Shown here one piece after another: positions 38,759-62,764 of a stretch of DNA of 64,000 nucleotides (positions are counted from its first letter, which is position 1; each line of letters opens with the position of its first letter). The DNA comes from Sminthopsis crassicaudata. Its lineage: Eukaryota. The stretch is from assembly GCF_048593235.1 (NCBI RefSeq), contig NC_133617.1, forward strand, positions 6,825,607-6,889,606. Reading direction: 5' to 3'. A program made the translations under genes and the position numbers. The notes beneath the pieces are model-generated. The model was not told the origin of the DNA. It worked only from the letters and a program-made list of their open reading frames with translations, and made no database searches.

Positions 38759-39411
38759 GTGAGTGAGCGTCAAGGGCGGCCGAGCCTGGGGGGACACGAG
38801 GTCCCCGGCGCCCGGTCTCATATGCTGGGGTGAAGAAGGGGGTGCAGAGAAGGGAAACGATGCGCCGAGCCGGGGGTAGTGCGCGTGCGCAATCCCTGCC
38901 CTGCCCCCTCGGAGGGTCACGCCCCCATTGGCCGTCCTGCGCCCTCAAGCCAATCAGCGCCGCCCAGCGACTTCCGAGCCAATCAGCGCCTCCCTTTCTC
39001 TGGAGCTTCTGCAAGTGTTTCAGGCTCCTCCCATCCCCATTGCCTCCCTTCTGATCTCTTCTCCCCCCTCCCTGTCTAACCTGAGGATCCGGCCCCCCGC
39101 CCCCTCCCCCCGTAAACCGGCCCGGAGAAAGTGTTAACGGCCGGAGGGAAGACTGCAGGGGAGGGGAGGGCAGGGGAGGGGGCGTGACCGGCCCGGCTGT
39201 GACCCCTCCGCCACAGGCCGGGCCAGGGGGGCTCCTTGAGCCTTCTGGCTCTGGTCCCCCCTTACCCCGCCCCTCCCCCGCTGGGGGCGTGGCCTTCCCC
39301 GAGTTCTAAACTCCTCTGGCTCCGGAGACCCTCTCCTTGTGCCCCGTCTTATGGGAGGGGGCTCCAAGGACCGACCCTCCCGCCCTCCTCGGGGCGCCGT
39401 CTGCTCCCCAG

Positions 39412-39498
39412 ATCTGCCTTCGGAAGCCCCTGCGGCGGGACAGGGTGAGGAAGAGGAAGGCCATGGCCCCCGTGCTGCTGCCGGCCAGGGCCCGCCAG
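39412..39498 (+). CDS. Gene C exon 2 with start codon (ATG at 39463; MAPVLLPARARQ)
   Basis: 'ctccccag|ATCTG...gccATGG...CAG|gtgag'; 36 coding nt, phase 0. Confidence 0.88.
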
Positions 39499-39560
39499 GT
39501 GAGGGGGGAGAGGAGGAGGGGAGGGCGGCAGGGGAGGGGGCAAAGGGGAGGGGGCAAAGG

Positions 39561-55946: not shown

Positions 55947-56310
55947 CGTGACGTCATCTCTCCTTGAACCAGACCGGGCGGCCCCCAGCGCTTCCTGGGC
56001 ATGCGCACACCTGGCCCTGGCCACCGCACTACGTTTCCCGTGAGGCTTTGCCGGACTCTGCCCCGCCCTCCATCCGGGGACGACCATGATCCCCCAGGTG
56101 AAGGCGGGGCCGTGGCTCGGGGTGGAGCCTGAGACTGTCTCCCTCCCCCTCGGAGCGCGCGGGCCTGGCTCGGACTGCGACGCTTCAGGGCCCTGAGACC
56201 CCCCCTGGCCGTGGCAGTGACCTTTACCCCCGGAGAGTGGGGGCGGTGGGCTCCGCGGAGAAACTGCGCCGGGCGGTGAAGCGGAGACTTCGAGAACCTG
56301 GCCTGCTCGG
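55947..56310 (+). promoter_or_regulatory. Probable gene D promoter and candidate exon 1 (donor GTGAGA at 56311)
   Basis: CRE GTGACGTCA near 55948; GCATGCGCA at 55999-56007; ACTACGTTTCCCGTGAGGCT from 56028; CpG island. An opposite-facing ETS site (CCGGAAGT, near 55417) suggests bidirectionality. Confidence 0.55.
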
Positions 56311-56809
56311 GTGAGAGGGGGCGGCGTCGCGCGCCTGGGCTGCCCCACCCCCACCCCGACCCGGCCTCTGCCTGCCCCACAACTGCGGGTGGGGACGTTT
56401 GCCAGCTCGGGCCCCGCCGCTGCCCTCCCCTCTTTGCCCCCCCCAGACCCTCCCTTTCCCCCCCCCACGCTCCCCTCCCGCCCAAAGCGGCTGCGGGGGG
56501 GGGCGGGGCGGGGGGTACAGAAGCCCGCCATGGCGGGGGAGGGGCAGAATCTTAGCTTGGATCCCCCTTCAGTTCCTCCTTGGCAGCCCCGTACAAGGGG
56601 CCTGGGGGGGAGGGGGCCGGCTGCTGCCCCGCCCCCACCCTGCGCGCCCCGGCTCCAAACCCTGCGGGATCTGCCGCTTAACGCAGGGGGAGCACCCGGG
56701 GAGGGCTCGGGGCCTTCAGGGGCTAATGGGAGAGGGCCTCTACTTCTCCTGCAGTGATGGACAAAGGCCCCCGATGCCCGTTCATCTAGTGTGCCCGGCC
56801 ACCAGGCTG

Positions 56810-57290: not shown

Positions 57291-59655
57291 CCAGCCGGGC
57301 TCCGGCCCCTCACCTCAGCCTGTCTCTCCTGCCTCCCTTGAGCGCGCCCTCCCGAGGGCCCGGGGGTCTCCATGGGGGCGGTCTTCCAGGGGCCTTGGTC
57401 CTTGCACTCTGAGCCAGGGCTGGCGGAAAGCCTCCTCCCTTTCCTTCCGCGGCCGCCTCAGAGAGGGGCACTGGGGTCCCCCTGGCCTGGGGCACGGACG
57501 GGGCCCTCGCGGCCAGCTCCAGCTGCTGCCTGCACCCTGACCTGCGTCCGGCGGGCGAGCCCCCCAAGCTGGCCTGCCGTGCGGTCCTCCAGTTGCCTCC
57601 ACTCTGCCCCCCTCAAGCCCTTTCGGTTATTCCCTGGGGGGTCAGCCCCGCTTAGGCTCACACTGGCACTGCTCATCCACTTGGCTCTCCTGGGTGGATG
57701 GTGCGACCAGCGCCCCCCACCGCAGATTCCCGCGAGCGCCGTGATGGGGGCACCCTCCCCCTCCGTGCCTCGCACTGGCCAGCGGGCTCTGGTTCCCCCA
57801 CCGGAGCTCCCACCCTCCAGAGCCGGGAGTTGCATCTGTCCGCAGGCGGGTGCCCCTCCTCCTGCGCCTCTGCAGTCCGGGCCTCGCTTGTGAACCTTTG
57901 AGAAACATTCCGGCTGTTACCCCGAGCAGTGTGTCCGAGCCTCCCCCAGGTGGGACCCCGGCTTCTGGGTGAGCTAGAGAGCGAGGGTCCGGCTTGGGAG
58001 GGTCAGCGCCTGGGGCCCTGTCTCTGCTCACTGGTGACCGCCGGAGCCTCCCATGGCAGAGCTGGCGCCCCTCCCAAACCCTTCCCTTCTGCCTTAGTTT
58101 TCTTTATTCTTTGTGTTCAAACAAGGACCATTTAATCAGCCAATCAGCAAGCACTGAGTAATTGCCTACTGTGTGCTAGGCACTGCCAGGGGGTGGGGGT
58201 CAGGAGCGCTCTTGAAGGGAGAAGATTTGGCTCCTTTGCCCCCTCCGGCCTTACCCTACAAACTTACCTTGTACTTAATTTCTGTGGTGGGGCTGGGGAG
58301 GTGGGAGCGGTCTTTCCGTCTTCTGGGCCTAGGACCACATGGTGGCGTCTAATTAATGCTTATATGGTGTAGCCCATGGAAGCAGCCGGGAGAGCTGGAG
58401 AATAGAGTGTATGAGGGAAGGGGTCAGCAAGGAGATGTTGTGAAGGCCTCGAAGGCCACCAGAAGAGGCAGGAGGGAGCCACTGAAGCTTCTGGATCAGG
58501 AGTGGGTCAGAGCAAGAAGCCCGGGCCGGGTGAGAGGGTGGGCAGTGGGATGGGTGCAAAGAAGGGGCCCGGAACTCTTCCCATCCTCCCTGGGCTTGCA
58601 AAGCAAGGCTATGGACGCCATCTTTCTCTCATTCCATGCAGAAGCGTTTGTTAAAAGGCCTACTGTGTGCCGGGCCCTGGAGATGCAAAGCCGTGAGTCC
58701 GTCCCTGCTCTCGGGAGCTTCCACTGGGCCCTGCCCCCGAGTTAACTTTCCCCATGTGTTGGAACTAGAACGTTAGAGTACAGAGAGCCGGGCCGACTAA
58801 GAGTTGGTCAGTCAGCATTTATTAAACGCCTACTGCGTGGCAAATGCAAGGCCGCGCTCAGCACTGAGGGTGCAAAGAGAGGCAAAAACCGCCCCAGCCG
58901 TGAGGAGGTGCCTGGTCGATGGGTACCGGGTACCGGAAGAGTCCTGCAGCCTCCAGGCCGGGGACGGGGCTGATCCTGGCTCTGCCATTTGTAAGAGATG
59001 CAGGACGAGTGTCTCCAAGACCCTCCAGCCAGGAACCACCCACGTGGTGAGAGGAGTCTCCCCAAGAAAGGCCTGGCATTCTGCCCGTGGCTGTTTCCTC
59101 AGCCCCACCGTTGTTCCTGATACATTTATTACGTCATATTAATGATACACGGAGCCGAGTGGGGACCAGCGTGACTTTCTTGGTGTCCTCTAGCACTCGC
59201 GCAGGGCCTGACTCAGAGTGTGAAGGACAGTTCAGTCCCCCTCCAGGCCCAATTTAAGACCGTCTCGGGACCACCCTCCCTAATTGTCTGCTGTCCCTTC
59301 AGCAGCAGAGGGGACACATAGGGAGCCGGCCCCAGCCTTTACCTAATTGACCCCTGGAGTTCTGGCTCTGCTGATTTAATTGCGTGATCTTAATTAAGCA
59401 AGTTAGTCCTTCTCTCTCAGTCTGAGCTCCCAAACCGACAAAAGGCGGAGGCCGGTCAGGCTCCTCTCTAGCACCGAGATTTCACAGGGCGCCCATTGGA
59501 TTTTGGTTCACCCTCATTTTTAGATTATTTTTTATGGAAACAGCATGTTATTAATACTTGCTTTACTCTTTTGGAGTTTACACATTATTTTTCCTGCTTC
59601 TGGTCTGGTATTTAACAGGGAAGAGGAAACGTAGTCTTTAAAATTGTTCTTTCAG

Positions 59656-59830
59656 GTTGGGAGATGAATCATATAAGCCAGATGTTCCCCCCAAAGCTGA
59701 ACTTTTTCACGGATATCTCTGCCCAGGATGAACTCCCAAAGGAGAGCCCCTGTGTCTCTGGGGTGGCAGAGGCTAGGGAAAGTGGTTCCAAGGCGGGGAA
59801 GGTGCAGGAAAATGAGGAGAAACATCCTGA
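59656..59830 (+). CDS. ZNF gene D, first part of the ancestral zinc-finger exon (spacer; first in-frame ATG at 59664)
   Basis: Acceptor 'ttctttcag|GT TGG GAG', same as gene A exon 5; open for 57 codons, then GA|GTAAGT donor. Confidence 0.7.
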
Positions 59831-60037
59831 GTAAGTAAACATTGTATAGGGGGGGGACTTTGGGTGAACAGAAAGGCCAGGAGTGGAATAAATATGGCAG
59901 AGACTTCATTCTCAGGTTAATGTGCTAGCAAGAATTGTAGAGAAAGTCTTTTCACGCAGGATCATCCCAGAGAGAATATCAGATTCTATTCAGGACTGGG
60001 TAAATATAGTCTAAACTGTTCAAAAGAAGGCTGGAAG

Positions 60038-60190
60038 GGGGCAGTCGGGTGGCGCAGTGGATAGAGCACCAGCCCTGAATTCAAGAGGACCCGAGTTCAA
60101 ATCTGGTCTCAGACATTTAACACTTCCTCGCTGCGTGAACCTGGGCAAGTCACTTAACCCCATTTGCCTCGGGAAAAGAAAAAATAAAAA
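60038..60190 (+). mobile_element. Marsupial CORE-SINE (WSINE1/Mar1-like) inside the putative new intron of gene D
   Basis: 'ggggcagtcgggtggcgcagtggatagagcacc...gcaagtcacttaacccc' plus A-rich tail. Confidence 0.9.
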
Positions 60191-60328
60191 GACTGGATGA
60201 ATGAAAAAAATCATGTGATAATCAAGATCTTCATGAAAAACAGAATCTGTACCTTAGAGAAACCTCCTGAATATAGTAAAGGTGGAAACTGTCTGACGCC
60301 CCAACTTAACTATTTTTTTCTATCACAG

Positions 60329-60932
60329 AACTGAAGGGAAATCCCCTCTTTGTAATGAGAGTGGAAATCCTTCCGTGACACAGAGCGGGACCGGCGTGTG
60401 CCAGAGCAAAGAGGTGGCCCGAGCCCAGAAAGCGCGCGATGGGGAGCAGTCTAGTGAGGGCAAGAAATTCTTCTGCAGGCGCCTTACCCAGCAGCCCCCG
60501 AGTCACTGCATAGACCGGCATTACTCCTGCACTCACTGCGAGAAGGCCTTCTGCCGGGTCTCAGACCTGGCCCAGCACGTGAAGACTCACACCGAGGAGA
60601 AGAACTACAAGTGTCAAGAGTGTGGGAAGGACTTCTACTCCAGCTCGGGGCTCACTCAGCACAAGAAATTCCACACGGCCGTGAAGCTTTTTCAGTGTAA
60701 CGAATGTAGCCGGGCCTTCCGCAAGAACAAACAACTGGCCCGACATCAGAGAGTCCACAAAGCGCAGAAACTCCACAAATGCAAAGAATGTGGGAAGGGG
60801 TTCTTTGAGAACAAATCCCTCACCGTCCACCAGAGAATTCACAGTGGGGAGAAGCCTTTTGAGTGCTCAGAATGTGGGAGGGCCTTCCGCCGGAACTCCC
60901 ACCTCACTCGACACCTGAAAACTCACGAATAG
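60329..60932 (+). CDS. ZNF gene D terminal exon with 5 C2H2 fingers. Predicted CDS = join(59664-59830, 60329-60932), 256 aa, no KRAB found
   Basis: Branch point CTTAAC, poly(T) tract and CACAG acceptor; phase-2 junction is in frame with the 185-aa finger ORF; AATAAA at 61036. Confidence 0.78.
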
Positions 60933-62239
60933 AAAAGGCCCAGTTGCATCAAACTGAAGGATTCTCTCAATCAAAATAAGAAAATGTGTCCCAATTTTAA
61001 ACTTTTTCGATCCACGTGGGAGGGCTTTCTGCAGAAATAAACCACTCGGTGTTATTTTGTTAAGTGTTTTTTGGATGCTTTTCTTTTTCTTTGGTATTCA
61101 GCAACTCTAAACCAATAAGTTAAAGCCCCCCTGTGTAACAGAAGTTTGATCCAGCACATTAAATGCACGCACTTTCTATCTCTGATAAATGTGTGCTTCA
61201 CGTTCTCATCTGTCACCAGTATACCAAGAGATGGATAGCAAGATTCACCACCACTGGTCATCTGGAATCATGTTGGGTGACAGCAGTAATTTGGGTTCTT
61301 AATCTTTTCATAAATTTTCTTTTACTGGGCTGTCAATGGACACATTGTCATCGGTTCATACGGATTCCTTCATGTTTCTCTGAATCCATACCCGATTTTA
61401 AAAGTTGCTACAACTATTTTTTAGCCTTTGGGCCTTTTCCTTGTTTATTTGATCCTTTTGAGGTATATCCCTAATCATGGCATGGCTGGGTCAGGAAGTA
61501 CAGTTGGATGACTTTGAGTAATAGATACCTCCAAAAGCTGGACCAACTCATGGCTCCAAAAGAGTTGCAGTAGAGTGTCTCTTCTCTTGACTATTGTTAT
61601 TTAGAAATTGTTGTCATCTTTGCCAAGCTGAACAGTCTGAGGTGCTGGATTTTATTTAATTTACATTTTTTTGCTTGAATTGGAGCATTTTATCATATGG
61701 TTGTTGAAAGCTTTTATCTCCTTCCTTGAAAATAATTCTTTCAACATTTATATATATTGAAGAGCAGCTTTTTGTTTTTATGTATGTTAATGGGTTCCTT
61801 GTGTGTATCAGTTTAATATCAGACCTTCATCAGAGAAGCCTGCTAACACTCTTTTCCTACTTAATCTGAATATATAAAAGCCTTTTAATTTCGTATAATC
61901 GATATTGTTCATTTTATCCACTATGATACTCTCAATTCTTTGTCTGGGTAAGTGCTTTTCTCCCATACAAAAATTCTTTCATTTCTCAAAATTGCTTCCG
62001 ATTTGACTTTTAATATTGAAATTGTATCCCTTTCGAGATTCTGGTAGTTTATGGTCTAAATTTGCGCTTCTGCCAGACTGATTTTTCCCAGCAGTTTTTT
62101 CACATAGTGAGTCCTCAGTCCAGGTTTATCAAACATTGTATAGTTAGGCTCATTCATTTCTGTATTACGAACCTATTCTGGTGTTCTTCCCCTAATTTCC
62201 AAATCCACCTGGTATGACAAACTTGAGGGCTCTATGTAG

Positions 62240-62764
62240 GTTTTTTCCCCTAGCCCTAACATCTCCCCAGCTTCCAATCCTGCCCCTCCAGCTACTTACA
62301 TTTGATCTCTCCACAGGATATTCCTCAGACATCTTAAAGGTGCTGTGTCCAACAGGAATTTCCTGTCTTTTCCACTAAACCCCACCCTCTCTCAGGCCCT
62401 TTTTATTGTTGAAGATGCCTCATCCTCCTAGTCACCCGGGCTCCCAGTAACAATGTTCTCAACTCTTTGTGATCAGCCCCACGCCCTTGTCTGTCCCCTC
62501 TCTTCTTCGACATGGCTACGACCTCAGGCCCCTTCCCCACTCTAGAACCCCTCCATCCAGCCAAGCGGGTGACCTTCCTGAAGCCTGCTTGGCAGTCCCC
62601 CCACTTGAGCCCTCCCTTCAGTAACTCCCCCAACCCCCAGGCAATTGGGGTAAAGTGATTTGTCCAGGGTCACAGCTAGGAAATGTTAATTGTCAGATCA
62701 GATTTGAACTGAGGTCCTCGACTTCAGGACTGGTGCTCTATCCACTGGGCCACCTAGCTGACCC
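62240..62764. mobile_element. L2 fragment (about 62240-62625, +) and CORE-SINE (62640-62764, -)
   Basis: L2 'ctcagacatcttaaa..gtgtccaa..' pattern; SINE head reverse complement 'ctatccactgggccacctagctgacccc'. Confidence 0.75.

What the first reader, a model, noticed from the sequence alone, without database searches (positions are those of the whole stretch)
59656..60932. Intronization inside a zinc-finger exon appears to rescue gene D
Seen: the exon starts like a normal KZNF terminal exon (cag|GT TGG GAG) and reaches TAA at 59832, but that TAA lies inside a perfect donor (GA|GTAAGT, 59831). The next 498 bp hold more stops, finger remnants (EWNKYGRDF, EKPPEYSKGGNCL) and a full SINE. They end at a strong acceptor (CTTAAC, T-tract, CACAG, 60328) whose AG derives from former His-Arg codons (CAC AGA). 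Splicing joins GA+A in frame to the intact 5-finger ORF. Established: KZNF fingers normally lie in one uninterrupted exon. Inference: a new intron was carved from coding sequence and now hides the stops and the SINE.
Basis: partly seen in the sequence, partly recalled or inferred. Interest (0 to 1): 0.85.

Follow-up and report, generated by a model that had tools for sequence, protein, structure and literature searches.

The report
Old intron carved from zinc-finger exon
A marsupial zinc-finger gene splices out about 500 bases that were once coding sequence of its last exon, and only that splice lets its five conserved fingers be translated, making it a clean, old (roughly 55-65 million years on published dates) mammalian case of an intron made from exon sequence.

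Summary
The exon starts at 59656 and the donor GA|GTAAGT at 59831 contains TAA 59832-34. The acceptor AG is at 60327-28, and the join GA+A is in frame with a five-finger ORF ending at 60932. Junction 59830^60329 is the main assembled transcript in 6 of 8 RNA runs.

The intron is real and was once coding sequence. With its SINE removed, exon 2, intron and exon 3 align as one colinear block to the protein of an intact wallaby KZNF. The intron part scores about 7 SD above shuffles and genomic controls. The acceptor lies in the "HHRIH" end of a dead finger.

It is not recent. Dromiciops has the same donor and acceptor, and the annotated bilby protein has the same join. The SINE came later: dasyurids and Dromiciops carry independent SINE insertions at different sites.

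The stop inside the donor is automatic for any phase-2 GTRAGT donor. The five fingers are under purifying selection (dN/dS about 0.1). Exon 3 has no Met, so translating the fingers requires the splice.

No intron-less outgroup ortholog could be fetched. This is a new, well-documented member of a known kind (intronization).

The parts
56211..56310 (+). 3' part of exon 1, a decayed KRAB-A box with an in-frame TGA at 56277-79. The exon ends at 56310 and the donor GTGAGA starts at 56311.
   Evidence: tblastn with gene C's KRAB gives E 0.01. Pfam KRAB scores 14.7 bits, below the 20.4 cut-off. The 30-nt loose end found in front of 59655 in 5 runs occurs only once in the window, at 56280-56309.
59656..59830 (+). 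Exon 2, the 5' spacer part of the ancestral KZNF terminal exon. It holds the start codon ATG at 59664-66.
   Evidence: The acceptor cag|GT has the same phase as gene C's terminal-exon acceptor and the same 35-nt spacing to CCAAAGCTG (PKL). It aligns to P0105 residues 89-145. dN/dS is 0.7-1.4.
59831..60328 (+). 498-nt GT-AG intron in phase 2, made from former coding sequence plus a later SINE.
   Evidence: Joint 59830^60329 is seen in 6 RNA runs. The same join is used in the annotated proteins of Antechinus, Sarcophilus, Dromiciops and bilby.
59831..59836 (+). Donor GTAAGT. The read-through stop TAA at 59832-34 overlaps it.
   Evidence: Dromiciops has GTGAGT, with TGA at the same codon.
59842..60028 (+). 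Relic of the coding spacer and degenerate fingers, now carrying stops and one frameshift.
   Evidence: A frameshift-tolerant alignment to P0105 residues 150-214 scores 74. The 300 shuffles have mean 35.5, sd 5.1 and max 58; the 632 genomic tiles have mean 33.2, sd 5.5 and max 62.
60036..60185 (+). tRNA-derived marsupial SINE with an A-rich tail. The target-site duplication is at 60024-35 and 60186-97. It is a secondary insertion.
   Evidence: It is shared by three dasyurids. Dromiciops has an empty site here and carries its own SINE about 60 bp further 3', with the duplication AAAAACAGAGTCTGT. ARAGORN calls no tRNA in it.
60254..60328 (+). Dead finger (..EKPPEYSKGGNCL..) that runs into the branch-like CTTAAC, the T-tract and the acceptor cacAG.
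   Evidence: nhmmer gives E 7e-4. It aligns to the first canonical finger of P0105, and the acceptor falls in QHHRIH.
60329..60527 (+). Start of exon 3: two further degenerate fingers, kept open but weakly constrained.
   Evidence: nhmmer gives E 6e-4 at 60330-77. One of these fingers is still intact in the bilby protein. dN/dS is 0.5-1.2.
60528..60932 (+). Five intact C2H2 fingers and the stop TAG at 60930-32. The 3'UTR runs on past 61400.
   Evidence: Pfam zf-C2H2 finds 5 stretches. dN/dS is 0.10-0.12 against Dromiciops. Contigs run past 61400.

Best explanation
Gene D descends from a canonical KRAB zinc-finger gene whose last exon once encoded spacer, degenerate fingers and finger array in one piece.

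In an ancestor of dasyurids and Dromiciops, about 300 bp of that exon became a U2-type GT-AG intron. The piece comprised the 3' spacer plus the first finger, up to its HHRIH helix end. The donor arose in the spacer. The acceptor arose from the CAC AGA of a finger's His-Arg behind a new T-tract.

Splicing joins the spacer, which holds the only usable ATG, in frame to the remaining array. The intron then decayed at the neutral rate and took up a SINE independently in each lineage.

The product is a KRAB-less protein of 256 aa whose five C-terminal fingers are conserved. Without the splice, translation ends after 56 codons.

Shown here: the junction, the homology of the intron to coding sequence, its age, the independent SINEs and the selection on the fingers. 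Inferred: that the ancestral ortholog was uninterrupted, and that the splice was fixed because it preserved finger expression.
For: - Junction: 59830^60329 is in 6 RNA runs from six studies.
- Orthologs: the same donor and acceptor are present in Antechinus, Sarcophilus and Dromiciops DNA. The spliced CDS reproduces the annotated proteins exactly. The bilby protein has the same join.
- Colinear alignment: exon 2, SINE-less intron and exon 3 align as one block to P0105 residues 89-459, score 505.
- Intron alone: score 74, against a null of 33-36 with sd about 5.
- Finger-profile hits lie on both sides of the acceptor.
- Paralogs A and C in the window keep spacer and fingers in one ORF, and gene C's terminal-exon acceptor matches gene D's in phase and spacing.
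- The SINE-less introns of the window and Dromiciops align end to end at 77% identity, with reciprocal empty SINE sites.
- The intron evolves at the flanking neutral rate, while the fingers evolve 2-3 times more slowly. Finger dN/dS is about 0.1.
- Exon 3 has no Met, and there is no in-frame ATG upstream of it in the intron.
Against: - No ortholog with an uninterrupted exon was recovered, so the ancestral state rests on paralogs and on the family's canonical structure.
- The strong intron homology comes from one paralog protein, P0105. It was picked after a blastx screen of about 180 proteins. A Gumbel estimate gives P of about 4e-5, or about 7e-3 after Bonferroni correction.
- P0105's own exon structure could not be checked, because no DNA was available.
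- Paralogs A and C in the window give no significant score on the intron (z from -1.0 to 1.4).
- The RNA evidence consists of assembled contigs, not raw reads.
Confidence: 0.85

Rival explanations
1. It is an ordinary ancestral intron. On this view exon 2 was always a separate spacer exon, and the finger-like bits in the intron are chance.
For: The intron is old and shared by at least two marsupial orders. Paralogs A and C show no significant similarity to it.
Against: There is colinear homology to P0105's coding sequence across the intron. Finger-profile hits abut the acceptor. The exon-2 acceptor matches the canonical terminal-exon acceptor. Published work states that KZNF fingers are organised in a single exon (PMC4484396).
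Confidence: 0.07
2. The intron began as an exitron. It was first an optional splice inside an intact coding exon, and the stops accumulated only after the short form took over.
For: Exitron splicing within the finger exons of human KRAB-ZNF genes is documented (PMC4484396). Low-level retention is still seen in the RNA contigs.
Against: All sampled lineages already have a stop in the donor (TAA or TGA), so no stop-free stage is observed. This rival shares the origin from coding sequence with the best explanation and differs only in the order of events. Its 0.35 is therefore conditional on that origin being true and is not additive with the other confidences.
Confidence: 0.35
3. It is a transcribed pseudogene, and the in-frame splice is fortuitous with no protein function.
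For: The KRAB box is dead, three fingers are dead, and exon 2 evolves neutrally.
Against: Finger dN/dS is about 0.1 across the dasyurid-Dromiciops split. The ORF is intact in five species. Finger substitution rates are 2-3 times below neutral.
Confidence: 0.05
4. The intron was gained by insertion, with the SINE or other foreign DNA supplying the intron.
For: A SINE makes up about 30% of the intron.
Against: The SINEs are independent and secondary, with reciprocal empty sites. The non-SINE 300+ bp is homologous to KZNF coding sequence.
Confidence: 0.02

Closest known systems
Intronization of exonic sequence (Irimia et al. 2008) and the PTC-driven model of Catania and Lynch 2008, both as cited in PMC4484396
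   Same: An internal stretch of coding exon became a spliced intron. The intronized piece carries premature stops, and splicing preserves a shortened ORF.
   Different: Reported clear cases are mostly very short introns (about 50 bp in Caenorhabditis and Cryptococcus, per PMC3257199) or lie in retrogenes and pseudogenes. This one was about 300 bp at origin, is the main assembled form, is fixed across marsupial orders and sits in a gene under selection.
Exitrons in human KRAB-ZNF genes (Marquez et al. 2015, PMC4484396)
   Same: Splicing occurs inside the single finger-encoding exon of a KZNF gene and removes fingers.
   Different: Exitrons are alternative, and the retained form is coding and free of stops. 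Here the retained form stops at once, and the spliced form is the main assembled one.
Canonical KRAB zinc-finger genes (paralogs A and C in the window; wallaby P0105)
   Same: Same cluster, same terminal-exon acceptor phase and spacing, same PKL...EK spacer, and tandem C2H2 fingers.
   Different: The KRAB-A box is dead, no KRAB-B exon is used, the terminal exon is split, and only 5 of about 8 fingers are intact, with mostly non-TGEKP linkers.

Membership tests
KRAB zinc-finger gene family | Intact KRAB-A box | tested here: not met
   Only a relic remains. It has an in-frame TGA at 56277-79 and scores 14.7 bits in Pfam KRAB, below the 20.4 cut-off.
KRAB zinc-finger gene family | Tandem C2H2 fingers | tested here: met
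   Pfam zf-C2H2 finds 5 stretches, E 2.3e-29.
KRAB zinc-finger gene family | Spacer and all fingers in one terminal exon | tested here: not met
   A 498-nt intron splits the exon. Paralogs A and C have a single ORF.
U2-type spliceosomal intron | GT..AG ends and an exon-exon junction in RNA | tested here: met
   Joint 59830^60329 with GT..AG ends is seen in 6 runs.
U2-type spliceosomal intron | Functional branch point and polypyrimidine tract | not testable with these tools
   CTTAAC at 60305-10 and a T-tract are present in the sequence and conserved in Dromiciops. No lariat data were available.
Intronization | Intron sequence homologous to coding exon sequence of relatives | tested here: met
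   The alignment score against P0105 is 74, with control maxima of 58 and 62. The alignment is colinear through exon 2, intron and exon 3. Finger-profile hits support it.
Intronization | Outgroup ortholog with the exon uninterrupted | tested here: inconclusive
   No annotated ortholog was found outside dasyurids, bilby and Dromiciops. No DNA was obtainable for bilby, wallaby, opossum or possum loci.
Intronization | Intron not created by inserted foreign DNA | tested here: met
   The SINEs are independent later insertions. The SINE-less introns align end to end at 77% identity.
Exitron | Retained form is coding and free of premature stops | tested here: not met
   The retained form stops at TAA 59832-34 and has further stops and frameshifts.

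The most novel reading that the evidence does not exclude
One point mutation both broke and rescued the gene. The T of the donor GT is the first base of the stop codon (TAA in dasyurids, TGA in Dromiciops). In the paralog the aligned residue is Gln. A C-to-T change could therefore have turned CAA into TAA and, in the same step, a weak GC donor into a strong GTAAGT donor. That would be a natural mammalian example of stop-driven intronization in which the nonsense mutation acts as its own suppressor.
Probability: 0.3. Interest if true: 0.65.

Novelty: new member of a known kind. Interest (0 to 1): 0.5.

Why it matters
Papers in the held library describe intron gain in vertebrates as extremely rare, and clear cases of introns made from coding exon sequence as mostly tiny or confined to pseudogenes. 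This case has a roughly 300-bp intron whose parent sequence can still be read. It is fixed across marsupial orders, and a conserved five-finger protein depends on it. It also shows one way a decaying KRAB zinc-finger gene can shed its dead front part and survive as a KRAB-less DNA-binding protein. The mechanism can be tested directly with minigenes.

Tried and rejected
- blastx of the intron halves against about 180 fetched ZNF proteins gave only weak single hits (best E 0.03 and 0.36).
- A single-unit finger profile over the whole window gave E of about 1 for the intron relics. Only a tandem profile with a restricted search space was informative.
- Frameshift-tolerant alignment of paralogs A and C from the window against the intron was not significant (z from -1.0 to 1.4).
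- An all-protein ranking script timed out.
- DNA for bilby, wallaby, Monodelphis and Trichosurus loci could not be fetched. Neither the Monodelphis nor the Trichosurus gene-C locus lists a called gene within 10 kb downstream, so an outgroup test by synteny failed.
- Look-up of Dromiciops isoform X2 failed; isoform X1 worked.
- ARAGORN calls no tRNA in the SINE.
- The scan's earlier notes held nothing on this locus.
- Insertion origin and pseudogene readings were rejected on the evidence given under the rival explanations.

Full report
**Observation**

- The exon opens at 59656 behind tttcag.
- The frame GT TGG GAG ATG... runs to TAA at 59832-34, which lies inside GTAAGT (59831-36).
- CTTAAC (60305-10), a T-tract and cacAG (60327-28) precede the next exon at 60329.
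- GA+A is in frame with the ORF that ends at TAG 60930-32.
- Pfam finds five C2H2 fingers in that ORF (E 2.3e-29).

**RNA evidence**

Contigs of eight public RNA runs were laid on the locus.
- Joint 59830^60329 (GT..AG, skips 498) is carried by the main contig in X6, X10, X12 and X13 (depths 51, 42, 8, 18).
- It is also carried in X5 and X9 (depths 41 and 83). Together these are six studies and two organism labels.
- Intron-containing pieces exist only at low depth. X6 has 4.7 against 51, X5 has 5.1 against 41, and X1 has one contig covering the intron's 3' end plus exon 3.
- The sequence in front of 59655/6 in five runs is a 30-mer that occurs once in the window, at 56280-56309. Exon 1 therefore ends at 56310, with the donor GTGAGA at 56311.
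- Exon 1 holds a dead KRAB-A box, VAVTFTPGEWGRW..R*SGDFENLACSG, with an in-frame TGA at 56277-79. Its Pfam KRAB score is 14.7 bits, below the 20.4 cut-off.
- The first in-frame ATG is at 59664, so the spliced mRNA encodes 256 aa.
- Exon 3 contains no Met, and no in-frame ATG lies between the preceding stop and 60375. The fingers can therefore be translated only through the splice.

**Orthologs and age**

Protein searches found four orthologs:
- Antechinus flavipes (P0001)
- Sarcophilus harrisii (P0002)
- Dromiciops gliroides (P0003 and P0185)
- the bilby Macrotis lagotis (P0109)

All four annotated proteins use the same join.

DNA was available for three species. In Antechinus and Sarcophilus the same GTAAGT...cacAG intron (493 and 498 nt) reproduces the annotated proteins exactly. 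In Dromiciops exon 2 (ending at about L004 8321) is followed by a 468-nt GTGAGT...ttcacAG intron.

Donor and acceptor are positionally homologous between the window and Dromiciops. With the SINEs removed, the two introns align end to end at 232/300 = 77% identity. The intron therefore predates the dasyurid-Dromiciops split, which general knowledge places at roughly 55-65 My. That date was not tested here.

Pairwise distances place the window species outside Antechinus plus Sarcophilus.

**The SINE is secondary**

The dasyurid SINE (about 60036-60185, duplication AAGAAGGCTGGA) sits where Dromiciops has an empty site. The Dromiciops SINE lies about 60 bp further 3', flanked by AAAAACAGAGTCTGT, where dasyurids have an empty site. 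These are two independent insertions into an intron that already existed.

**Was the intron once coding?**

The exon-2 acceptor matches the canonical terminal-exon acceptor of gene C. Both are cag|NT in phase 1, and both lie 35 nt before CCAAAGCTG (PKL). Paralogs A and C keep spacer and fingers in one ORF.

I wrote a frameshift-tolerant protein-to-DNA alignment for this test.
- Against the intron alone (356 nt, SINE removed), the terminal-exon part of wallaby KZNF P0105 scores 74.
- The 300 dinucleotide shuffles have mean 35.5, sd 5.1 and max 58.
- The 632 genomic tiles of the window have mean 33.2, sd 5.5 and max 62.
- The aligned stretch is P0105 residues 150-214 against window 59842-60028, with one frameshift and two stops.
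- Run on exon 2 plus SINE-less intron plus exon 3, the method returns one colinear alignment to P0105 residues 89-459, score 505.
- In that alignment the acceptor falls in FFYHR|TE, opposite QHHRIH of P0105's first canonical finger.

A tandem finger DNA profile hits 60254-60303 (E 7e-4), 59878-59915 (E 7e-3) and 60330-60377 (E 6e-4).

Caveats:
- P0105 was chosen after a blastx screen. A Gumbel estimate gives P of about 4e-5, or about 7e-3 after correction for about 180 proteins.
- P0105's own DNA could not be fetched.
- Paralogs A and C give no significant score on the intron.

**Selection**

JC distances are given in the order window-Antechinus / window-Sarcophilus / Antechinus-Sarcophilus.

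| Segment | JC distances |
|---|---|
| Flanking non-coding | about 0.11 / 0.11 / 0.06-0.09 |
| Intron, 5' part | 0.10 / 0.12 / 0.07 |
| Intron, 3' part | 0.11 / 0.05 / 0.08 |
| Exon 2 | 0.13 / 0.11 / 0.10 |
| Five fingers | 0.041 / 0.057 / 0.030 |

dN/dS values:

| Segment | dN/dS |
|---|---|
| Five fingers, against Dromiciops | 0.10-0.12 |
| Five fingers, within dasyurids | 0.12-0.49 |
| Exon 2 | 0.7-1.4 |
| Degenerate start of exon 3 | 0.5-1.2 |

Only the fingers are constrained at the protein level. The N-terminal 120 residues appear to be kept merely open and in frame.

**Interpretation**

The stop inside the donor is not special. Any GTRAGT donor in phase 2 reads G|TRA. It does mean that donor and stop share one base. 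Opposite the stop, the paralog has Gln, so a single C-to-T change could have made both the stop and the strong donor. This is inference only.

Two models fit, and the data cannot separate them. One is stop-driven intronization (Catania and Lynch, as cited in PMC4484396). The other is an exitron-like optional splice that later became the main form.

**Comparison with known work**

Intronization is an established concept. Exitron splicing inside the finger exons of five human KRAB-ZNF genes is reported in PMC4484396. According to PMC3257199, clear intronization cases are few and short (about 50 bp), and vertebrate intron gain is considered extremely rare.

This locus is a new, well-supported member of that kind. 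It is unusual for its size, its age, being the main assembled form, and the dependence of a conserved protein on it.

**What is missing**

No outgroup ortholog with an uninterrupted exon was obtained. DNA for bilby, wallaby, Monodelphis and Trichosurus was not retrievable.

Noticed in passing
window 56211-56310: Exon 1 of gene D is a dead KRAB-A box with an in-frame TGA. The Dromiciops and bilby orthologs have differently decayed KRAB relics, so KRAB function was probably lost early in this gene.
   Followed up: partly
window 57946-58692: Minor alternative 5' exons of gene D appear in the RNA contigs. The joints are 57946^58639, 57947^58371 and 58692^59656 in X10, and X9 shows a matching loose end.
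   Followed up: no
P0109 (bilby) against window 60440-60527: The bilby keeps an intact extra finger (YKCSECERDFCLSTQLMHHLRSH) where dasyurids and Dromiciops have a decayed one. The array seems to be eroding from its 5' end at lineage-specific rates.
   Followed up: no
window 42141-46788: Gene C (KRAB-A box from about 42141, terminal exon 45569-46788) has near-identical fingers in Trichosurus (P0076) and Monodelphis (P0089). That is unusual conservation for a KZNF across marsupial orders.
   Followed up: partly
window 39337-41971: There is a long GC-rich tandem repeat that is open in several frames (GREDCQ / GGLPGE / RTARGG units), with a very strong GC and AT skew.
   Followed up: no
window 58200-62600 against L001 and L002: The window species is equally distant from Antechinus and Sarcophilus (JC about 0.11), which are closer to each other (about 0.07). 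It is therefore a dasyurid outside that pair.
   Followed up: partly
I did not examine it.
   Followed up: no
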